A stretch of DNA of 63,961 nt, counting the filler, from Octopus bimaculoides (taxonomy: Eukaryota), in NCBI RefSeq assembly GCF_001194135.2. It is 5 parts of 4 records of this genome, joined end to end, with 100 filler letters (N's around TTAATTAATTAA, not from the genome) between each part and the next. Parts side by side here need not be neighbours in the genome. Positions count along the whole stretch, not along the records: positions 7,385 to 38,534 come from NC_068982.1; 4 more parts are not named here. One strand, 5' to 3'. Below the pieces are notes generated by a model. That model was given only the letters and a program-made list of their open reading frames with translations, was not told the DNA's origin and made no database searches. The stretch's first letter is position 1, and each line of letters starts with the position of its first letter. This document shows, in pieces, positions 8,472 to 35,019 of this stretch. The position numbers and the translations under genes were made by a program.

Positions 8472-8686
8472 ATCATTTCTAATATAGACACAAGGCCTGA
8501 AAGTTTCGAAGGAGGGAGACAGTCGATTACATCAACCCCAGTACTTAACTGGTACTAATTTTATCGAATCCGAAAGGATGAAAGGCAAAGTCAACCTCGG
8601 TGAAATTTGAACTCAGAACAAAAACACAGACGAAATGCTGCTAAGCATTTTGTTCGGCGTGTTAATGGTTCTGCCAGCTCGCTGCC
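8472..8686 (-). mobile_element. tRNA-derived SINE, family B
   Basis: Minus head GGCAGCGAGCTGGCAGAACCATTAAC...GTTCTGAGTTCAAATTTC, then GACTTTGCCTTTCATCCTTTCGGATTCGATAAAATTAGTACCAG; homologous to 31528-31747 and 47195-47545. Confidence 0.85.
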
Positions 8687-8768: not shown

Positions 8769-9224
8769 ACTAAGCACATACAAACATACACTTACATACG
8801 CACAAGCACAAATATTTGTACTGCATGGAAACTTCATTCTCGAGTGAGTTGTAAAAAGTATATAATGTTACAATAAACATAATACTGATCAATCAAACAT
8901 TTACTCTATCAACGAGCACTTCTTCTACCCCGTTGATCTGTTCGACCAGAACAGGATAACGCAAAGCAAGAATACAAGTAGTATAATATATAAACACTAT
9001 GGATTGCTTCATCTCCAGTGTACAATATAATATCTATAGCGCATTCAATACGATATACGCATGAATATTAGCAGAACTATTAATTCCATCCTCTAAGTTC
9101 CATATCTATATGTGTGTGTTTTATTAAATATATCATTTCACCATTAGATTCTTTTGAATTTGATATATTAGCTTTTAAAGAGCATATGATAACTTAGCAT
9201 ATTGTACACAGACACAAAAAGATT

Positions 9225-9350
9225 GCTTTTCAACCATATGATTCGAGTTCAGTCCCACTACAGAACACCTCGAGCAAGCGCCTTCTAATATAGCAGTGAG
9301 CCATTCGAAATCTTGTAAGTAGATTGGTAGACGGAAACTGAGAGAAGCGC
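9225..9350 (+). mobile_element. SINE family A, decayed 5' fragment
   Basis: CAACCATATGATTCGAGTTCAGTCCCACT...GGTAGACGGAAACTGAGAGAAGC matches the family A head. Confidence 0.7.
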
Positions 9351-10804: not shown

Positions 10805-10950
10805 GTGGCCAGTTGGCGGTCGTTAGAGTTCCGGGTACATTGTTTTGTAGCGATCATATTGGGTCTTTTCACTCGAAGTTAAAATTTCGCCGATGTCAAT
10901 TTTGCCTTTCACCCTTTCGGAAGCAATAAATGAAGTACCAGTTTTGTATT
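10805..10950 (+). mobile_element. SINE family B, decayed
   Basis: GGCCAGTTGGCGGTCGTTAG...TTTTGCCTTTCACCCTTTCGGAAGCAATAAATGAAGTACCAG. Confidence 0.6.
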
Positions 10951-11691
10951 AGGTTAGCTTCTATTTCTGCCACTCTTTCTATCTCACTTTCGTGACGAAA
11001 TCGGCTGGGACCAAGCCTAGAGAGAGACGGACTGGTACCTCCAGGTCTAAAACGATGCCCAAGATATGCCGTATGCCAGGATTATACCTTTATGACTCCA
11101 TCAAGGAGCTGAGGGCACAAGAAAAAGTAATCAATGAATTCAAAAATGATGTCTTGGTGATAGAAGAGATGCTAAAACTGCAATGGGAGAAGAATATATT
11201 GTTTAATCTTTTATTCATTTACAGGTTTCAACAAGTGAGCAGTGATCTTGCTGGTGACTGTTGGAAAGTTTCAAAGAATTAACAGATACAGATTTAAAAA
11301 CAATGCATTTTGAAGAAGATCTATTTGTTAAAACGAACCATGAAGGTCTCTAAATTTAATTAAAGATATTTTCGAAGGAATCTGTACTTAGAGATATGTT
11401 AAAGCTGTAAACAGAAACTTCATGTGTGCAGTAAATGGTTTGATAAACACTGAAATATTTACAAAAACATATTCGTTGATATAGTAATCCTTTCGTTAAT
11501 CAAAATATAGCTAGACCATTTACAAATAATGTGAATGAACTTTATTCTCCTGTCTGTATTCTTCTATGTACTGTTTTACACTTTATCCGTCTATCTACAA
11601 TTCTGTTCCTTATAAACTGTAAATTTCCCTGTCTAGAACTTTGATATATACTCACCTTATCTCTGATGACTGTACACCCAGTGTACGGGTA

Positions 11692-11762
11692 GCGAAGTTT
11701 TTTCCCACGAGAAATCCAGACTCCAGTTATAAACTCATTTGCATACAGCCAATCAGTGCTCA
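11692..11762 (-). promoter_or_regulatory. Promoter-like cassette, left copy (CCAAT box + octamer)
   Basis: ATTTGCAT at 11737-11744 and CCAAT at 11749-11753. Followed on the minus strand by a short exon-like stretch ending ATAAG|GTGAGT (donor at 11655-11650). Confidence 0.5.
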
Positions 11763-12143
11763 ACTATCAAACTAATTTCTGAGCGCATAACAATGGTTAA
11801 GGAATGACCATGTTTCTTTTCTTTCTTAATAATGCTTGTTGTTCTTGTTCTTGTTTCAACCGTGGCTGCCTCTGTGTAGTTATTTGTATTATTGTTTACT
11901 TTGTAAAGCAGTAAGGACAGAAGGTTGCTAGTACATCACCCTCTACCCACATTTTCCCCATCCACATCTTTACCATATGGAGCCCTAACAAAATCCGATA
12001 ATAGGTATAGATGCGAATCTACCTAATTACTTGTCTCCTTCTAAAATCAGGCATAACTTGGCGATCGGTCGACTTACAACACCGTTCTTTGTCTTGAGTT
12101 TACTTGGTAGAGTATGTTTGTTAACTTGACCACAAGGTCAAGG

Positions 12144-12215
12144 TGAGCTCTGATTGGCTGTATGCAAATGAGTTCATTACTGGGGTCTGGAACTCTCGTG
12201 AGAAAAAACTTTCGC
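12144..12215 (+). promoter_or_regulatory. Promoter-like cassette, right copy (inverted repeat of 11692-11762)
   Basis: ATTGG at 12153-12157, ATGCAAAT at 12162-12169, TCTCGTGAGA at 12194-12203. Differs from the reverse complement of the left copy by 7 substitutions and 1 indel over 72 columns. Confidence 0.5.
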
Positions 12216-12357
12216 GTACGAGCATGCTTGCCTATCACTTGAGACATCCAAGAAACAGCTGTAAGACTTCAAATTCACCTTACCCTAATTAAATATTCTA
12301 AATGACTTGAGATACTCATCTTGCCTTGGTTTTGCTGTCCTTTTTCCTCTAATATAT

Positions 12358-12416
<59 letters not shown>

Positions 12417-12659
12417 TTTTTTTTATAGAACCGGAGAAAAAAGGGAAAATAGGAAGAGAGAGAAAGAAGAAACTCGGAAATTAAGAAACAGGAGGAGCGT
12501 GAAGCTAGTCTCCGTTGTATCAATAAGGAACTAGGTCATTCTTTTCTAGCCATCAGCCTAAGCTATTGTCGTCTGTTACCGACGGCGAATAGTATCAAAA
12601 TAAGGTGTTGAAATTTAATATTTACCACCTCCTCAAATGGTCAACTGGTGAAATGTTGT

Positions 12660-12950: not shown

Positions 12951-13369
12951 TGGTGTGGTAGGTATTAAGTGTAGAGATGATATCGCTTAGAAGTTGCAGG
13001 ATATACTATTGACAAATGCTATGGTCCATGGTTTTAATGAGGACATTTCAAGAGATCTTAAGGAACAATTTGATTTCAATAAGAAGTCAGCGACAGTGCT
13101 TAAAAGGTTGTGAGAAAAGAAAAGGGAAATTAATCTAATTTTAAACTTTTCCACTGTGTGGGCGAGGGTTAACATAGAAAAAAATTTGTTTCAAAAGTAC
13201 ATCGTTGGAAGTGAAATTATTAATTAATGTTAATTTAAGCATAAGTCCAGCGGCCACGAGGGGACGAGCAGTGATATCTCCGATCCCAGTACTACTAAGC
13301 AGGTACTTTATTTCCCAATAACAGACTCTTCAGTGACTTTTGTACTTCAGCCGAATCCTGGTTAGGAAC

Positions 13370-14830
13370 ATTTACTCTATTGAAGATCAGATGGCTATCT
13401 CGAGAAAAAGTTCTGCAACAAGTTATGCCATTAGGAAATGAAGTAGAAATTCTTTTATCTGAAAAAAATAATTCTTCAGCTTTAAGATTTCGAAATTCCG
13501 TGTGGGTGCTTCAATTCGCTTATCTTTCCGATATTTTATTTTTCATTCAATTGAATTACTTGAATATCTCTCCGTAAGACTGATCAAACAATTATTGATT
13601 TAATAGAGAAAATAAATGTATTTAAAGAAGTCTCAAAGTATGGAAAAGGAAACTGGACCAAGAAAGAACTGCATCTTTGCAGCATTTAATCTACTGCAAA
13701 ATATCGGTAATAACTTTAATGATGTACAAAATATTTTCTTTTCACCATCAAACAACAGTAGTTACAGAATTCAATCACTACATTGTAATATAAGCTGCTG
13801 CGCAATATAATTGGCCGTGGATTCCTTTTAATTTTAGCAATAACGATTTTCATGACGATTTTGTCAACAATAATACTTTTCAAGAAAGCTTTGTTCAAGT
13901 TTAAAATGATTTATAGCTTCAATAAAAATTTGGAATTTATCAGAACATTCTCATTGAATGTCAGACAGGGGAAAATATTAATCCTTGGAAATGAAGTAAT
14001 GAAAGTGTTTCTTCCCTTTGTTACAACATACCTGCGTGAATCGAGGTTCTCAGCCCGAACAAATACAAAGGCCAGACAAACAACTTAATTGCAACAGGAA
14101 GCTGACTTAAGATTCAGATTATATCAATGGTGAATCCTGGACTGGAAGAACTTTCTTAACTTGTCCAAATTCAAAGTTCTTATTCAATTGCAAAAAAAAA
14201 ACGGGTATATAACTTCCCTAAATTTAAGTAAAGAATTTTTGAGAATTATCGTAAGACGGGGATATGACAGACATGCACAGATCTTGCATAGAGACTGATG
14301 TGATGCTAAGTTATATAACTGAGAATTTTGGTGACAATATCTTTTCGCGATAGTGAACGTAATGCCATGGAAACAAACAAACCTATAAAATAATGAGTGA
14401 TAGGCATTGCTACAGTTAAGTAAATAACATTTAAATCAGTTTCCTGAGGTTTATCAATATTTAGTTTCATAAAATAAATTACCACGTAAAATAAATTTAA
14501 TAAGGCGCTATAATTGTAAAATTAATTGGATTTTCCTAGTCATAGATTCAGTCAGTTTTCAAGCAATAAAATTTATTTTAAATATTTTTCTCGAGTTATG
14601 GAGTAAATCAAGCAAAATCATCCACCATTTCCCATTTTATATTACTGATTTCACCTTTTTTTCCTTTAATTAAATATAAAATTACTTCGCAGTATACTGA
14701 GTAAAAAAGTAATAGAGTTAATGCAATTCATTAGATTTTCTTCAATCTTTTTTTTAATTTAATTTTTCGGTCGCCATCTTGAAACTATATGCTACTTTGG
14801 GTCGCTATGCAGAAAGGCTGAAAACCTCTG
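13370..14830 (+). mobile_element. hAT-Buster/Charlie-type DNA transposon, 3' part with right TIR, pseudogenised
   Basis: IRWLSREKVLQQVMPLGNEVEILLSEK...WVLQFAYLSDI (RWLSR hAT motif) and LGNEVMKVFLPFVTTYLRESRFSA (dimerisation domain). Ends GGGTCGC...GGCTGAAAACCTCTG at 14830, the reverse complement of a CAGAGGTTTTCAGCC Charlie-like terminus. Confidence 0.85.
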
Positions 14831-15989: not shown

Positions 15990-16177
15990 TATGTATGGGG
16001 ACACAGACTGTTTAGAATCTGGATCACAGTTGCCCGACGAATGGGAATGCAGTAGCAGTTTTTTGTGATATTTTTGTGATGTTTTTGCAGTTTTAATGAC
16101 AAAGTATCTTATTCTATCTCCGGTATTCGTGTACTACTTTCCCACCTTGTTTCACAGTTATTTACTTACTGTGGTAT

Positions 16178-16579
16178 ACTCTTTTACTTGCTTCAGTTAT
16201 TTGACTGTGGCCATGCTGGAGCACCGCCTTTAGTCGAGAAAATCGACTCCAGGACTTATTCTTTGTAAGCCTAGTACTTATTCTATCGGTCTCTTTGGCC
16301 GAACCGCTAAGTTACGGGGACGTAAACACAGCAGCATCGGTTATCAAGCGATGTTGGAGGGGGCAAACACAGACACACAAACATACACACATATATATAT
16401 ATTTATACATATATACGACGGGCTTCTTTCAGTTTCCCTCTACCAAATCCACTCACAAGGCTTTGGTCGGCCCGAGGCTATAGTAGAAGACACTTGCCCA
16501 AGGTGCCACGCAGTGGGACAGAACCCGGAACCATCTGGTTGGTAATCAAGCTACTTACCACACAGCCACTCCTGTGCCT
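16178..16579 (-). mobile_element. SINE family A, full length (tRNA head, CORE-like CCTTGGGCAAGT block, internal TA/CA microsatellite, 3' domain)
   Basis: Minus head AGGCACAGGAGTGGCTGTGTGGTAAG...GGTTCTGTCCCACTGCGTGGCACCTTGGGCAAGTGTC; more than ten homologues in this window. Confidence 0.9.
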
Positions 16580-16684
16580 ATATATATGTGTAGCCTTTTT
16601 GCTTGTTTGTTTATTCACCGTTTCGTTTTCTTGTCTTGTTTTCCGTCCGCCACTACCCTCCACGAAAATAATTTAATTTGTGTT

Positions 16685-16955: not shown

Positions 16956-16959
<4 letters not shown>

Positions 16960-17362
16960 AATGTAAGGATAAGCAAGTTAGGCAGGTCAGTATACAAAGT
17001 ATATTGGATACATGAAATATAAAACATGTATATATGTTTACATATTCCCCCTCTAATAGACTTAGCTCTCCACAAATTCATTCTATCTTTGAATCTCTTT
17101 CTGTCAATACCTCCTTGACGACGGAGGCTTGTCTCCTCCAACGATGGAATCAATCCACAAACATTATTCTGAACCACCGAGCCCCCAGAAACAGCTGTTG
17201 GATTTTTAATACATTTCTTCAACCGCTTTAATTCTAGATATCATTTCTATTCTGTGTAAGTCGGACCTTTTTGTATGTAAACATATATACATTTTTTGTA
17301 TTTCATATATTTAATATACTTTGTATATTGAGCTGCCTAACTTGCTTATCCTGACATTTACT
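16956..17362. mobile_element. 89-bp inverted repeats around a 229-bp spacer; probable Ty3/gypsy 3' end plus an inverted second LTR
   Basis: Arms at 16956-17044 and 17274-17362. On the minus strand the spacer reads ...SLRRQGGIDRKRFKDRMNL, then a polypurine run AGAGGGGGAATA and TGTAAACA, which resembles integrase tail, PPT and LTR start. Confidence 0.55.
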
Positions 17363-17574
17363 TCTTTACCTGCTCAAGTTTAAATCTCGAGCACTACTAA
17401 GTGTATTCTATACAGAGAATATCATCTATGAACTATATATATACATATAAAGTGATAGAATGTATTTCCCAATTGAAGGTTACACTTTACAACTAAGGAA
17501 AAGGAATTTTGCATAGGGAAACATTTTTTCACATACATAGATATATACATATCTATATATACATGTGCATGTGT

Positions 17575-17700
17575 ACGGCGGGCTTCATTCAGTTTCCGTT
17601 TACCAAATTCATTCACAAGGCTTTGGTCAGTCCGGGACCATTGTAGAAGACCCTTGCCTAAGGTATCACGAAATATGTCGGAAGCCAAATCATCTTATCA
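17575..17700 (-). mobile_element. SINE family A, partial 5' half
   Basis: ACGGCGGGCTTCATTCAGTTTCCGTTTACCAAATTCATTCACAAGGCTTTGGTC... Confidence 0.75.
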
Positions 17701-18468: not shown

Positions 18469-18848
18469 GGATCTATTCCATCTCCATCACAGATTTTTTA
18501 AATTATTTTTTTTAACTAAACAGATTGAAACTTCGAATACTGGTAGAATTTCTCACGTAGAACACGGTTTACTCGGAACGTTTTTGACAAAATTTTGTAA
18601 TTTAGAAGTTATTTCGTGTTAAAGTTGTATTTGTAGCTTTCTTCAACCGAAAACACGTCGGTGGTTGGTTGAAATTACCCAAATACGACAACTTTGACAC
18701 AAAATAACTTCTAAAATACGAAATTTTGTCAAAAACGTTCCGAGTAAACCGTGTTCTACGTGAGAAATTCTACCAGTATTCGAAGTTTCAGACTGTTTAG
18801 TTTTAAAAAAATTAATTAAAAAGTCCGTGATTGAGATGGAATAGATCC
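18469..18848. mobile_element. Foldback/MITE-like element: 380-bp near-perfect palindrome
   Basis: Starts GGATCTATTCCATCTC and ends GAGATGGAATAGATCC. An internal block GAAACTTCGAATACTGGTAGAATTTCTCACGTAGAACACGGTTTACTCGGAACGTTTTTGACAAAATTT is matched exactly by its reverse complement. Short central loop near 18650-18665. Confidence 0.85.
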
Positions 18849-19044
18849 ACAATTTAGAGATTAAAATTTAAAAATAAAAGGAAATGGATATTTTGTGTGT
18901 TGAGTGGCAAAGTGATTAATATACCAATGAGTTTATCTGGGAGATGAGTGATTCATAACTATGTCGCTATTTAGAAAAGAGTCTTGTTAATGATTACAAA
19001 ACATTTGTATATTTATGTAATATTCTTTTTATTCTTTTATTCTT

Positions 19045-19245
19045 TTATTTGTTTCGGTCATTTTTTGACTGCGGCCGTACTGGAGCACAGCCTTTAGTCG
19101 AGCAATTCGACCCCAAGACTTATTCTTTTGTAAGCCTGGTACTTATTTTATCGGCTCTTTTGCCGAACTGCTATATTACGGGGACGTAAACACACCAACA
19201 TCGGTTGTCAATCGAGGCTTGGGGGGGACAAACACAGACACGCAA
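19045..19245 (-). mobile_element. SINE family A, 3' half
   Basis: GACTGCGGCCGTACTGGAGCAC...TTACGGGGACGTAAACACACC...GGACAAACACAGACAC. Confidence 0.85.
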
Positions 19246-19293
19246 ACATATACACACACAAACACACACACACACATTCACACACATACACAT

Positions 19294-21350: not shown

Positions 21351-21847
21351 TAAATAATACGCAAAAAGTACTCCAATGTGAAAGGTATATTCATCGAACT
21401 GAAAAGATTTTTTAAAATCATTTACGTAATTTAGCTTCTATATCTATGCACATTATTTTGTTCTGTATGCACTCCATTTAGACTGCTGGCGCTTTGATTT
21501 TTCTTTGTCACGTGCGCTGTTTTGACTAATCAGAATCTTGTAGACTGTTGAGCAGTAAACGCACAGTAAAATCTATTCTTTTTTTCTCGACTTGACACCA
21601 TTTCCTCGTCTCAGGCCAGTCTATCTCTCCTTCTGACCTTTTATTTTAACAGCAATTATGCATCAGTTATATTGCACGTATTGTATTCTACCTTGATATT
21701 AGTTAACTTCCTCCACCTCAGCATAGCCTCGATAGAATTCCGTCAGTAAGTATGGATATGTTTAACTTAATTTCTCCGATAACTATGTATCTGTCTCCAT
21801 GAATTTAACGTAGCAACACAAGCCCCCTCATTAGAAGAAAATACCTC

Positions 21848-22276
21848 TCTTTTACTCTTTACACTTTTACTTGTTTCAGTCATTTGACTGCGGCCATGCT
21901 GGAGCACCGCCTTTGGTCGAGCAAATCGACCCCAGAACTTATTCTTTGTTGTAAGCCTAGTACTTATTCTATCGGTATCTTTTTGCCGAACCGCTAAGTT
22001 ACGGGGACGTAAGCACACCAGCACCGGTTGGCAAGCGATGGTGGGGGGACAAACACAGACACACAAATACACACACAAACACACACACACATATCTATAT
22101 ATATATATATATATATATACGACGGGCTTCTTTCAGTTTCCGTCTACCAAATCCACTCACAAGGCTTTGGTCGGCCCGAGGCTATAGTAGAATACACTTG
22201 CCCAAGGTTCCACACAGTGGGACTGAACCAGGAACCATGTGGCTGGTAAGCAAGCTACTTACCACAGAGCCACTCT
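21848..22276 (-). mobile_element. SINE family A, near full length
   Basis: Collinear with 16178-16579. Confidence 0.9.
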
Positions 22277-23965: not shown

Positions 23966-24872
23966 CGGCCGAATTTATCCCCAGGTTTAAAATGTTATCA
24001 AATCTTTGGATACTTTTGGCAGAACCCAATCTTTTGCTAGGATTTTGGGCCAGGTCTCCACTTAAAGGACAACTTCTTCCCTATCTCCTACTAATTTCGG
24101 AAGTTCTAGACAAATAAAGGGTTCATATACGCTGCTCTTCCCTCTGTTAGTGTTAATAAAAGCTAGTTAAGTGTATGCTAATTCTGGTCTTTTACATCAA
24201 TTATAAAACAATTTGGCTTAACTATTATGCTAGTAGTACCATACCATTTTAAATTTCTTTTATATTTACCTAATTCAACTTGCTTACTACATCAGGTATG
24301 GTAACATCCACTTTGTTAAAGTAAGAAAACGCCTACTTTACTAATAGTATTTTCTGTTAAATTTGTCTATGGATATTTACTCAAATTTTAAACTATCATG
24401 TCTATCTGTGTTCATTCATGAAAAATCTGTCTTCTCTAGTCATTCTAAGATCTGGAAACCACCCTGTGTTTTGTTGATGAAACACCACAAAGTCACCTCC
24501 ACTGCATTTCATAGTTATTTAATTCAAATTCCAGCGTTGTCTTCCCCGCCTGATGTAAATAGCTGCAAAACTAACACCATCCTTTTCTGTTCAGTATGTC
24601 GGTTAAAGGCAGAAAAGTGGTGGAGAAAAGAGTCTCCTTGAATGGAGATGAGTTTAATTTTATAAGTCCCTCTTTATGTTTGCAGCTGCAGAACTGCTTG
24701 ACATTTACTCATGAAATGTAATATGTATTCTATTACTGTTGATACTACCTTGCTCATGGTTAGTTTCCAAGGTCCACGTGCGAGGAATACTCTCAAAAGC
24801 CTTCCGAAAGTTTATCCAAGCCATGCATAGACCCTTCTTTTTCTTTCGGCAGTCTTCAGTTATAGCTATTTC

Positions 24873-25274
24873 CATCCACTGATTCCAGCAGGCATGCCCT
24901 TTGAATTGAAGAGACTTCAGTTTCCAGTGAGAGTTAGTTTTGCAATATCAATTAACAAGAGTCAAGGACAATCACTGAAAATTGTTAGACTTCACCTCAT
25001 GCAGTAGTGCTTTTCCCATTGTCAGGTCTATGTTGGTTGTTCCAGAGTTGGAAATGGCAACAATCTCTTCATACTCACGTCAAATGGTAAAACCAAGAAC
25101 AGTATTTATACTGCTGATTTACAGTGATCTCTAAATGTCACGGTGATACAAAATACTCCAAATGTGATACTCTGTGATATAAATCTTAAATGATACGATA
25201 CCAATAAATGCTTTATTATTATTTCTCTCTTTAGTTTTGGGCCGCAGGCCCAATTCGCCCGCCACAGGAGCTAA
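24873..25274 (+). mobile_element. Helitron 3' end: PIF1-helicase C-terminus, 3' UTR, subterminal hairpin and CTRR terminus
   Basis: HPLIPAGMPFELKRLQFPVRVSFAISINKSQGQSLKIVRLHLMQ*CFSHCQVYVGCSRVG...NGKTKNSIYTADLQ* (24873-25127). Hairpin TTGGGCC-GCA-GGCCCAA at 25237-25253; CTAA at 25271-25274 followed by T. Confidence 0.9.
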
Positions 25275-28809: not shown

Positions 28810-30470
28810 TAGACCTGCTCAAATGTTTTCTGTGGTCTGAAAGGAACAAACTGGATTTCCCGAATGTGCCACTGTGGACATGGACAAACCACATCGGGAC
28901 ATCTAAGTCGTATGTAGAGTATTCTGTTGGTCAGTAGACTGGTATAGCAAAAGTCGTCCACATTTAAAAATCGTCGGCTACACAGACCACAAATTTGTGA
29001 TCTGTACGTTCGACCTAGGTGAGCCTCATAGGCAGAGACCCGATTAATGGGAGCTAAATGCGTCACTCCCGGCTTCCAAATTTACAGAGTCTAGATTAGC
29101 GAATTAGTTTAGCGCGGTCAATCGTCAACAACAAATTGCAGTTCGCCCTGAAAAGGACGATTAGAGTAGTATCCATTAAGTTTAGTGTGGTCATAGTAAT
29201 TGAGAAAAATAGAATAGAGAGAGACTTAGCCATAAACTTTGAAGAGGTTCTTAGGAAAGGTATCGCAACCTACGTGCTTGCGGTGAGATTCAATGCATAG
29301 CACGAAGAGACAAATGGCGCGCTGGAACGTAGGATGGATTTCACTGCCTACCTTGACGACCCGCCGCGATTCTCGGCAAGAGAAGTGAAATGTTGTGAAA
29401 AGTCAATAACAGTTGTAGAATTACATGGCTGCGTGAAGGGCAAATTGCCTGGTTTGGATGGTCTACTCTGCGTGCTTTAATTTTATATGCCGGACTTGTT
29501 TGGAGACTTCTTGGCAGATATCTCCCGCAACTGGTAGCACAACAAGAGGATTCCCAGTTTGAGAGTTGAAGAGTGGTGTAAATACTCAGAAAGGACCCAA
29601 ATAAGAGGGATCACATTGATAATTCCCGCTCCATAAGTCTGCTAAACGCAGAATTTAAAGTTTCAGCCAAGCAAAGAGGTTGGCCCTTATCGAGGGCTTG
29701 ATAGGCGATTCACAAACATGCGAAATCCTAAACAGATCTATCCACGACAATCTTCATGTGATACCTCACAGAGGTTGGATAATGAGTCTGACATGGGTAG
29801 AACTCTGGTCAATTTAGATCAATCAACAGCCTCTGATAGGGTTGATCACCAATACTTGGCGGCTGTTCTCGCGGTAGTTGGTTTCGGACTCGTTTTGCGC
29901 GGCTGGATTACCGCAATATACAGCAACATCTTCTCGGTGTTTCGAATGAATGGTCACCTATCAGAACTACTCAGCATCAAGGTTTCCCCTCTCACTTCCG
30001 TATGTACTGACTCTAGAGCCACTACAGCGGAAACTGGAGACGTTGAGAGTATCTCGTAGGGCGTGAGGGAACCGTGTTGGCATATGCAGATGACGTCACC
30101 GTCAAAGTGTCGGATATCAGACACATAGACTTGATCGGCGCTACTCTAAAGGAATATGAGACAGTGACATAGCAAATATCAAACAAAAAAGTCAGTGGGG
30201 TTGCCGCTTGGTACCTGAAGAGGTAGATCTATGCCACCCAATAACATCGTGGGACGCTGGACGGACGAACCTGTTAAATTACTCGAGGTCTAGTTTGATC
30301 CAGACCTTTTAATTGGGGAAAGACTGGAACGAGATGACGAGTAGAGTATCCAGTCTCACCGAGAGATAGTCCGAGAGAAAGCTTTCCCTGAAACTTCGAG
30401 TACGGGTGGCCAACGCATACATCACATCCGTTTTTATACTACCACCTGACCGTTGTGCCTTGCCTCAGTT
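28810..30470 (+). mobile_element. Tx1/L1-clade LINE ORF2 remnant (end of APE endonuclease and RT)
   Basis: LDFPNVPLWTWTNHIGTSKSYV...GYTDHKFVICTFDL (TW...SR.DR and xDH APE motifs); LVNLDQSTASDRVDHQYLAAVLAVVGFG...WITAIYS...RMNGHLSE (RT); YADDVTVKV near 30085; ANAYITSV...LTVVPC at the end. Confidence 0.85.

Positions 30471-31469: not shown

Positions 31470-31526
<57 letters not shown>
31470..31526. repeat. (AGT)n microsatellite
   Basis: Directly visible; abuts the SINE B head. Confidence 0.95.
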
Positions 31527-31527
<1 letters not shown>

Positions 31528-31747
31528 AGGCGGCATGCTAGCAGAATCATTAGCGCGCCGGACAAAATGCTTTCGTCCGTCCCCTTACTTTCTGAATTCA
31601 TATATTCCGCTGAGGTTGACTTTGCCTTTCATCCTTTCGAGATCGATAGAATAAGTACCAGTTGAGCACTGGGGTCGATGTAATCGGCTAACCCCGTCCC
31701 CCAAAATTTCAGGCTATGTCCCTATAACAGAAAGGTTTATTATTATC
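31528..31747 (+). mobile_element. SINE family B, full length with (ATT) tail
   Basis: GGCGGCATGCTAGCAGAATCATTAGCGCGCCGGAC...GAGGTTGACTTTGCCTTTCATCCTTTCGAGATCGATAGAATAAGTACCAG...ACTGGGGTCGATGTAATCG. Confidence 0.85.
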
Positions 31748-33660: not shown

Positions 33661-33675
33661 ATATTAAATTGCGAT

Positions 33676-34074
33676 CTCTTTTACTCTTTTACTCTTTTAC
33701 TTGTTTCAGTCATTTGACTGCGGCCATGCTGGGGCACCGCCTTTAGTCGAGCAAATCGACCCCAGGATTTATTCTTTGTAAGCCTAGTACTTATTCTATC
33801 GGTCTCTTTTTGCCGAACCGCTAAGTTACGGGGACGTAAACACACCAGCATCGGTTGTCAAGCGAAGTTGGGGGGACAAACACAGACACACAAACATATA
33901 TATATATATATATATACATATATACGACAGGCTTCTTTCAGTTTCCGTCTACCAAATCCACTCACAAGGCTTGGTCGGCCCAAGACACTTGCCCAAGGTT
34001 CCACGCAGTGGGACTGAACCCAGAGCCATGTGGTTGGGAAGCAAGCTACTTACCACACAGCCACTTCTGCGCCT
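33676..34074 (-). mobile_element. SINE family A, full length (small internal deletion)
   Basis: Collinear with 16178-16579. Confidence 0.9.
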
Positions 34075-35019
34075 ATATATATATATTAAAATTTATTAGC
34101 AGTAGTTATGTAATAATATTTAATTGCTTTATAAATGCAGGTTCTGTTAACATTATTGCAAAAGTTTCACAAGGTGCTTCACATACTAAGAGTTCATAAG
34201 ATGAGATACTGCACATTAGGCTAGCAAATAGCTTTTGATTCATTTTGTTGTTGTTGTTGTTGTTGTTGTTGCTGTTGTCGTCGTCGTCGTCGTCGTCGTT
34301 GTCAAAAAGTCAATGTCCAAGGATTCCAGATTTGAAAGTTTTTCTAATACTTGTACATTGATTTCCATGACTCTGAGAGTGAACTCTTTAGGAAGTATTT
34401 ACTTCCAGATGATCTTCCAAATGATCCAAGAACTATCGCAGCTCAACAAAGGTCCAGATAAGAAACTCCAAATAAAGTTATGCATGAATATGTTTTCGTA
34501 AACTTGAAGATGATACTAATATCGACAGTGTAGCATTTCTTAGTGTCGTGATCATCCTATCACATTTTGGCGGTTATATATTCGCTATCTAAGAGCATGA
34601 GATAGTTTCAAAATACCTAATGATATAAAGATACAGTGAAGCATTTAAACCCTCCAGGACTCGACAGGAAATGTCAATTACGTCATATTTCTTTGAAAGA
34701 AATTGTGCATGCCATCAGCAAGTGTTCGGAAATGTCATTAAAGTAATCCCGTCCAATGTGTCCTGACATTAATACTAAAACAATATATGATGCTATTCAT
34801 AGGAAAGATTTCTCTGGGATAAATACAGAAAATATTTCTGCTGTTCATCGTATGCGTATATTTCAAAACAAGGAACACTAATGGAACATTCTCATCAAAA
34901 CTTCCAACCGATTTAAATGTGTTTGCTGCAGAAGAGAAAAATTATGTGCGTTCATAGAGGACAGCTGCTCTGGACTTTACTTTCAAAATCTGTGAAAAAG
35001 AGAATATTTATGAGCATAT

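What the first reader, a model, noticed from the sequence alone, without database searches (positions are those of the whole stretch)
11692..12215. Inverted pair of CCAAT + octamer promoter cassettes, 381 bp apart
Seen: 11692-11762 and 12144-12215 are inverted copies (7 substitutions and 1 indel in 72 columns). The 25-nt block CTGATTGGCTGTATGCAAATGAGTT, holding a CCAAT box and a perfect octamer, is invariant, while the changes fall outside it. Each arm also has a one- or two-mismatch version of the TCTCGCGAGA promoter palindrome. Established: NF-Y plus POU octamer is a classic promoter combination (e.g. histone H2B). Inference: a bidirectional promoter made by inverted duplication, or the promoter-bearing TIRs of a Mutator-like element. 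No TSD was found.
Basis: partly seen in the sequence, partly recalled or inferred. Interest (0 to 1): 0.75.

Follow-up and report, generated by a model that had tools for sequence, protein, structure and literature searches.

The report
Probable small transposon with promoter-like ends
The inverted repeat is real, but it looks more like the two ends of a small, old, non-coding DNA transposon that carry transcription-factor sites than like a purpose-built two-way promoter; whether either end drives transcription could not be tested.

Summary
Windows 11692-11765 and 12141-12215 are inverted copies (71 nt, 89%, blastn E 8e-20). They are the only copies in the 31-kb piece, and both carry CTGATTGGCTGTATGCAAATGAGTT exactly.

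- The repeat has sharp ends. The spacer and the outer flanks are unrelated.
- The 9 nt just outside the two ends form a direct near-repeat, GTACGGGTA / GTACGAGCA (7/9, P about 0.003). It looks like a decayed target-site duplication.
- The same piece holds two other short inverted-repeat or foldback structures.

My best reading is therefore a 524-bp MITE-like transposon with 72-nt terminal inverted repeats.

The promoter reading has no direct support.
- No gene, Pfam domain or RNA family flanks the repeat, and CpG is not enriched there.
- The 25-nt invariant block is not statistically unusual (P 0.22).
- The "TCTCGCGAGA" copies lack the CGCG core.

Two things keep a promoter role open for the left end. 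It reads CCAAT, octamer, TATA-like box in that order. The only perfect splice-donor consensus in the piece lies 36 nt beyond it, on the outward strand.

Genome copy number and RNA evidence could not be obtained.

The parts
11683..11691 (.). Left copy of the candidate 9-bp target-site duplication, GTACGGGTA
   Evidence: Direct 7/9 match to 12216-12224. It abuts the end of the inverted repeat. Binomial P 0.0028; empirical P 0.003-0.005.
11692..11765 (-). Left arm (candidate terminal inverted repeat). It reads outward on the minus strand.
   Evidence: 89% complementary to the right arm. Its outer end is GCGAAG...
11747..11756 (-). NF-Y box CTGATTGGCT (CCAAT on the plus strand at 11749-11753)
   Evidence: matches the extended consensus CTGATTGGYY.
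11737..11744 (-). Perfect octamer ATGCAAAT
11727..11733 (-). TATA-like TTTATAA (TATAAA on the plus strand). Present only in the left arm.
   Evidence: Read from the sequence. The right arm has TTCATTA, which accounts for two of the seven substitutions.
11703..11712 (-). Degenerate TCTCGCGAGA-like word (TCTCGTGGGA, 2 mismatches, CGCG core broken)
   Evidence: Words this close occur 10 times in the piece.
11766..12140 (.). 375-nt spacer: unique, non-coding, with no internal symmetry
12141..12215 (+). Right arm (candidate terminal inverted repeat). It reads outward on the plus strand.
   Evidence: Its outer end is ...CTTTCGC.
12150..12159 (+). NF-Y box CTGATTGGCT
12162..12169 (+). Perfect octamer ATGCAAAT
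12194..12203 (+). TCTCGTGAGA (1 mismatch to TCTCGCGAGA; core is CGTG, not CGCG)
   Evidence: The core requirement comes from PMC6192621.
12216..12224 (.). Right copy of the candidate 9-bp target-site duplication, GTACGAGCA
11650..11658 (-). Perfect 5' splice-site consensus AAG|GTGAGT, 36 nt outward of the left arm (exon would end at 11656)
   Evidence: It is the only MAGGTRAGT on either strand of the 29-kb piece. By PWM it ranks 3rd of 3466 GT sites. Its link to the repeat is inferred, not shown.

Best explanation
The 524 bp from 11692 to 12215 are most likely an old, non-autonomous DNA transposon of the MITE type. It has two 72-nt terminal inverted repeats around a 375-nt non-coding filler, and it appears to have inserted with a 9-bp target-site duplication (GTACGRGYA).

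The CCAAT box and octamer belong to the terminal repeat itself, so both ends have them simply because transposon ends are inverted copies of each other. Long terminal repeats of this kind, as in Mutator-like elements, normally hold the transposase binding sites and a promoter, and they can read outward into flanking DNA.

Shown: the repeat, its sharp ends, the flanking near-repeat and the motif quality.
Inferred: that it moved as a transposon, and which superfamily it belongs to.
Unproven: whether either end still acts as a promoter. I put the chance that the left end does at roughly 40%, conditional on transposon origin.
For: - The inverted repeat is highly significant and is confined to 72-nt arms. 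Neither the spacer halves nor the outer flanks show inverted similarity.
- The 9 nt outside the two ends are a direct 7/9 match, with the first 5 exact. P is about 0.003 for that fixed pair, and it is the best of 70 boundary/length combinations tried.
- The element has no coding capacity and folds into a long stem (z = -9.7).
- The same 31 kb holds two more inverted-repeat or foldback structures (18469-18848; 16956-17044 with 17274-17362), a SINE-like family and a hAT remnant. Such elements are therefore common in this sequence.
- The two arms differ by 11% and the two flanking 9-mers by 2 of 9, a similar degree of decay.
- Long Mutator-type terminal repeats are known to carry promoters and to read outward (PMC3310237; bioRxiv 10.1101/2023.06.05.543741).
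Against: - No second copy of the element or its arms was seen. The genome-wide copy number could not be measured.
- Four of the seven flank matches are the palindrome GTAC. They could equally be an extension of the inverted repeat across a 5-nt indel, and the remaining 3/5 is not significant.
- With all boundary and length choices counted, the duplication reaches only about P 0.03-0.2.
- The termini (GCGAAG...) match no superfamily signature that I can name.
- No related transposase was found.
- The adjacent NF-Y and octamer sites (0/300 simulations) and the perfect donor 36 nt outside the left end are better explained if at least one end is a working promoter.
Confidence: 0.55

Rival explanations
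1. A host bidirectional promoter. A 72-nt core promoter (CCAAT, octamer, TATA) was copied in inverted orientation 375 nt upstream. Two divergent transcripts start just outside the arms and are spliced from short first exons.
For: - A full NF-Y consensus lies next to a perfect octamer (0/300 simulations).
- Reading outward, the left arm has the order CCAAT, octamer, TATA-like. A perfect AAG|GTGAGT donor lies 36 nt beyond it and is unique in the piece.
- NF-Y boxes are typical of bidirectional promoters (PMC1802594, PMC2559893).
Against: - No gene, exon, Pfam domain or RNA family lies on either side within 4 kb (left) or 26 kb (right).
- CpG is not enriched.
- The right-hand 'donor' GTAAGA ranks only 280th of 3466 GT sites, so it is ordinary. 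The right arm also lacks the TATA-like box.
- Motif invariance is not significant.
- No known mechanism copies only a 72-nt core in inverted orientation.
- The direct 9-nt flank repeat is left unexplained.
Confidence: 0.15
2. An inert local inverted duplication, for example from fold-back repair or template switching. The motifs are chance matches. It is neither a transposon nor a promoter.
For: - Octamers are not enriched in the piece (3 seen, 2.6 expected). An octamer with any CCAAT within 20 nt arises in 18% of simulated pieces.
- The duplication evidence weakens once the GTAC palindrome is discounted.
- No copies and no transcripts were found.
Against: The extended NF-Y match, the 7/9 flank repeat and the unique perfect donor would each have to be coincidence.
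Confidence: 0.15
3. The right arm is the promoter or 5' end of the neighbouring hAT transposase gene, and the left arm is a rearranged copy of it.
For: - A hAT remnant lies on the same strand at 13317-14127.
- A full-length ORF would start near 12400, about 190 nt past the right arm.
- The arm translation GVWISRGKKL resembles the hAT motif VRWLSRGKVL.
Against: - The family profile matches only positions 306-574 of 592. Nothing of the N-terminal half is detectable between 12215 and 13317.
- The motif resemblance has E 0.2-1.3, which is chance level.
- No 8-bp duplication is present at the ends (1/8; 6/8 if the left boundary is shifted 1 nt) and no hAT-type termini are seen.
Confidence: 0.05
4. 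A hairpin-RNA locus. If read through by a host transcript, the 72-nt arms pair and yield small RNAs.
For: The predicted stem is strong (-94 kcal/mol, z -9.7).
Against: A strong stem follows automatically from any inverted repeat. There is no Rfam match, no RNA data, and a 375-nt loop is atypical for microRNA precursors.
Confidence: 0.05

Closest known systems
MITEs / non-autonomous TIR DNA transposons
   Same: About 0.5 kb long, non-coding, with terminal inverted repeats, sharp ends and a short flanking direct repeat. It lies in a repeat-rich region that holds other foldback-like units.
   Different: Copy number is unknown, with only one copy seen. The 72-nt arms are long for a MITE. The flank duplication is imperfect (7/9).
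Mutator-like elements (MULEs) and their derivatives
   Same: Long terminal repeats that carry promoter-type motifs, and a 9-bp flank duplication. Mu ends are known to provide outward-reading promoters (bioRxiv 10.1101/2023.06.05.543741; PMC3310237).
   Different: No MURA-type transposase or autonomous partner was found. The arms are shorter than typical plant MULE repeats (100 nt or more). Merlin (8-9 bp), P (7-8 bp) or hAT-like (8 bp, 6/8 here) duplications cannot be excluded.
Histone H2B-type promoter (CCAAT, octamer, TATA)
   Same: The left arm, read outward, has these three elements in that order within 30 nt.
   Different: There is no histone ORF or any other ORF downstream. The octamer is in the opposite orientation to the H2B ATTTGCAT. 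The right arm lacks the TATA-like box.
CGCG element (TCTCGCGAGA) bidirectional core promoter
   Same: A 10-mer with 1 or 2 mismatches lies in each arm.
   Different: The CGCG core is CGTG in both arms. Changes to or within the CGCG core abolish activity in reporter assays (PMC6192621). There is no CpG island. That element was described in vertebrates.
Transposon-derived regulatory cassettes (MITE- or LTR-borne factor sites)
   Same: Transcription-factor sites are carried in the ends of a repeat, as in MITE-derived enhancers in Xenopus (PMC12676858).
   Different: No activity, chromatin or binding data exist for this locus.

Membership tests
TIR DNA transposon / MITE | Terminal inverted repeats with sharp outer ends | tested here: met
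   Arms of 71-72 nt at 89%, E 8e-20. No similarity beyond the ends.
TIR DNA transposon / MITE | Target-site duplication directly abutting both ends | tested here: inconclusive
   GTACGGGTA / GTACGAGCA match 7/9, P about 0.003 for the fixed pair. However, GTAC is palindromic and many boundary and length choices were scanned.
TIR DNA transposon / MITE | Several dispersed copies in the genome | not testable with these tools
   Only this copy exists in the 31-kb piece.
TIR DNA transposon / MITE | Small size and no coding capacity | tested here: met
   The unit is 524 bp. The longest internal ORF is 36 aa, and nothing has homologues.
Mutator-like element | 9-11 bp target-site duplication | tested here: inconclusive
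   A 9-bp near-repeat (7/9). An 8-bp reading (6/8) is also possible.
Mutator-like element | Related autonomous element encoding a MURA-type transposase with matching terminal repeats | not testable with these tools
   No way to search this genome by DNA. The protein searches returned nothing relevant.
Bidirectional promoter | Two divergent transcription start sites or genes less than 1 kb apart | not testable with these tools
   No RNA data were available. No ORF with a homologue or domain lies on either side.
Bidirectional promoter | CpG-rich, unmethylated island (vertebrate type) | tested here: not met
   CpG o/e is 0.54-0.60 at the repeat against a median of 0.75. The relevance of this test in an invertebrate-like genome is uncertain.
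CGCG element | Intact central CGCG in TCTCGCGAGA | tested here: not met
   Both arms have CGTG. The requirement comes from PMC6192621.
Histone H2B promoter | Histone H2B coding sequence downstream | tested here: not met
   No such ORF and no Pfam hit in the flanks.
hAT element | 8-bp target-site duplication, short YARNG-type termini, and continuity with the neighbouring hAT coding remnant | tested here: not met
   The 8-mer at the ends matches 1/8 (6/8 only with a shifted boundary). The termini are GCGAAG. The hAT profile covers only 13317-14127.

The most novel reading that the evidence does not exclude
A mobile element whose two ends each carry a compact CCAAT-octamer(-TATA) promoter that fires outward. 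Each insertion would then plant a portable two-way promoter. Here the left end would have been taken over as the start of a host transcript, with a first exon of about 45 nt spliced at 11656.
Probability: 0.25. Interest if true: 0.55.

Novelty: new member of a known kind. Interest (0 to 1): 0.3.

Why it matters
If this is only a decayed MITE, it is ordinary repeat annotation. If the ends are active outward promoters, it would be an animal counterpart of the outward-reading promoters of maize Mutator ends. It would also be a concrete case of a DNA transposon spreading NF-Y/POU-responsive promoters and creating new first exons in a repeat-rich invertebrate-like genome. That question is directly testable with a genome-wide copy count and 5'-end RNA data.

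Tried and rejected
- **RNA genes.** Rfam found nothing at gathering thresholds or at E up to 10, and no tRNAs were found. A small-RNA-gene promoter (snRNA or Pol III type) is therefore rejected.
- **Flanking genes.** I tried ORF lists, Pfam on concatenated flank ORFs, a 3839-aa concatenated ORF query and an exact look-up of 12 window ORFs. All were empty.
- **Other copies of the arms.**
  - A six-frame pseudo-protein search found no hits.
  - Exact 22-mer scans of the metagenome, prokaryote-genome and viral collections found nothing.
  - A control scan with the piece's abundant SINE-like 26-mer was also empty in the metagenome collection, so these negatives say nothing about copy number.
  - A literature search for the sequence strings found nothing.
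- **Link to the neighbouring hAT remnant.** A profile of 25 full-length relatives maps only the C-terminal half, so the link is rejected. The 'WISRGKKL' resemblance is at chance level.
- **Larger palindrome.** The idea that the arms are part of a larger decayed palindrome is rejected.
- **Empty-site reconstruction.** Joining the flanks gave no informative ORF or repeat. On the minus strand the joined flanks could form a 70-nt exon (YAG ... AAG|GT), but the acceptor has a poor pyrimidine tract, so I did not pursue it.
- **By-eye TE calls.** Pfam did not confirm my calls of RT-, Pif1- and mariner-like fragments.

Full report
**What is there**

The piece (7385-38534) is AT-rich (GC 32-44%) and full of microsatellites, assembly gaps and dispersed repeats. 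From memory I think the SINE-like repeat resembles cephalopod sequence, but I could not verify that.

At the finding, the repeat finder reports one strong inverted pair: arms 11695-11765 and 12141-12211, 71 nt, 89% complementary, 375 nt apart. Self-blastn gives E 8e-20. Including a terminal GCG after a 1-nt indel, the arms run 11692-11765 and 12141-12215. The 25-mer CTGATTGGCTGTATGCAAATGAGTT is exact in both arms and occurs nowhere else in the piece.

**How much of the motif argument survives**

- **Invariant block.** With 8 differences in 71 columns, a mismatch-free run of 25 nt or more arises by chance with P = 0.22. This is not evidence of selection.
- **Octamers.** They are not enriched: 3 in the piece against 2.6 expected. 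An octamer with any CCAAT within 20 nt appears in 18% of simulated pieces.
- **NF-Y site.** The CCAAT box here is the full consensus CTGATTGGYY, placed 2 nt from a perfect octamer. That combination never arose in 300 simulations. The motif pair is of real quality.
- **TCTCGCGAGA words.** Words within 2 mismatches occur 10 times in the piece. Both arms have CGTG where the element needs CGCG, and changes to or within that core abolish activity in reporter assays (PMC6192621). I discount them.

**Context**

- No RNA family and no tRNA was found.
- CpG is not enriched: o/e is 0.54-0.60 at the repeat against a median of 0.75.
- The flanks have no ORF with a Pfam domain or a homologue.
- The only confirmed coding remnant nearby is a frameshifted hAT transposase fragment at 13317-14127 on the plus strand. 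It corresponds to profile positions 306-574 of 592.
- The N-terminal half of that transposase is not detectable between the right arm and 13317. I therefore cannot tie the arms to the hAT copy.
- A resemblance between the arm translation (GVWISRGKKL) and the hAT motif VRWLSRGKVL is at chance level (E 0.2-1.3).

**Anatomy that points to a transposon**

- Similarity stops sharply at both outer ends. Neither the spacer halves (P = 1.0) nor the outer flanks (P = 0.10) show inverted similarity.
- The 9 nt just outside the ends are GTACGGGTA (11683-11691) and GTACGAGCA (12216-12224). This is a direct 7/9 match with the first five bases exact.
- For that fixed pair P is about 0.003, both by the binomial and empirically in this piece. 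It is the best of the 70 boundary/length combinations I scanned.
- The caveat is that GTAC is its own reverse complement. Four of the seven matches could instead be an extension of the inverted repeat across a 5-nt indel, and an 8-bp reading gives 6/8.
- The unit has no coding capacity and folds into one long stem.
- The same 31 kb holds a 380-nt foldback (18469-18848) and another inverted pair with 89-nt arms (16956-17044 / 17274-17362). Structures of this kind are common in this sequence.

Taken together, a 524-bp MITE-like element with 72-nt terminal repeats and a decayed 9-bp duplication is the most economical reading. I give it 0.55. A 9-bp duplication and long promoter-bearing ends fit Mutator-like elements best (PMC3310237). 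Membership cannot be established without a related transposase or other copies.

**What keeps a promoter role alive**

- Read outward on the minus strand, the left arm has, in order: the NF-Y box (11756-11747), the octamer (11744-11737) and a TATA-like TTTATAA (11733-11727).
- About 30 nt further lies the end of the arm. Another 36 nt on lies AAG|GTGAGT (11658-11650).
- That is the only perfect MAGGTRAGT on either strand of the 29-kb piece. By a simple donor matrix it ranks 3rd of 3466 GT sites.
- The chance of such a site within 60 nt outward of either arm is about 0.006.
- The right side is weaker. The TATA-like box is lost (TTCATTA), and the GTAAGA at 12261 ranks 280th, which is ordinary.

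So a two-way promoter is not supported. The left end could nevertheless be a working, possibly transposon-donated promoter with a first exon of about 45 nt, as described for maize Mu ends (bioRxiv 10.1101/2023.06.05.543741). Alternatively the element may simply have landed next to the 5' exon of a minus-strand gene. I could not find that gene. Only 4.3 kb of sequence lies to the left.

**What could not be done**

The DNA collections on hand do not contain this genome. The 22-mer scans were empty, but so was the metagenome-collection control scan with the piece's own abundant SINE-like repeat. Window ORFs are not in the protein collection, and a six-frame pseudo-protein search of the arms found nothing. 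Copy number, empty sites and transcription therefore all remain untested. They are the decisive experiments.

**Verdict**

The repeat is real. It is probably the two ends of a small old DNA transposon that carry a good NF-Y plus octamer site. The second reading, promoter-bearing terminal repeats, is the better one, with Mutator membership unproven. This is a new member of a known kind, of modest interest. Interest would rise if outward transcription from the ends were shown.

Noticed in passing
18469-18848: A near-perfect foldback of about 380 nt (self-inverted, 86%), with termini GGATCTATTCCATCTCC... / ...GGAGATGGAATAGATCC. It has the highest CpG o/e in the piece (1.69). It looks like a foldback or MITE-type element.
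   Followed up: partly
16956-17044 and 17274-17362: A second inverted pair with 89-nt arms (91%) and a spacer of about 230 nt, next to a (TA)n run. Its architecture is like the finding's.
   Followed up: partly
16177-16587, 21846-22275, 33675-34082, 35016-35273 (-), 19027-19277: A SINE-like repeat family of about 410 nt, 84-94% alike, with an internal (CA)n/(TA)n microsatellite. There are also partial copies at 17531-17670 and 9220-9348.
   Followed up: partly
13317-14127 (+): A frameshifted, 5'-truncated hAT transposase remnant (RWLSR... to ...PFVTTYL.ES.FS). It has 333 relatives in the representative library and covers profile positions 306-574 of 592.
   Followed up: yes
11695-11724 (-) and 12182-12211 (+): In one frame the arms translate to GVWISRGKKL / GVWNSREKKL, which resembles the conserved hAT motif VRWLSRGKVL. 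The tblastn E-values are 0.2-1.3, so I judged this to be chance.
   Followed up: yes
12140-12148 (+): A strong donor-like AAG|GTGAGC at the inner edge of the right arm, ranking 4th of 3466 GT sites. Two of the four best donor-like sites in the piece lie beside the repeat.
   Followed up: no
12354-12424: A (GATA)n microsatellite about 140 nt beyond the right arm, followed by a purine-rich run.
   Followed up: no
29646-30056 (+), 24708-24947 (-), 25008-25124 (+), 37752-38265 (-): ORF fragments that by eye look like LINE reverse transcriptase, a Pif1/Helitron helicase tail and a Tc1/mariner transposase. Pfam did not confirm any of them.
   Followed up: partly
8547-8613 and 10877-10943: A short inverted pair (67 nt, 81%) flanking about 2.3 kb to the left of the finding. 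It translates to ...FAFHPFG.DKISTS and also matches 31526-31741, so it is probably part of another dispersed repeat.
   Followed up: no
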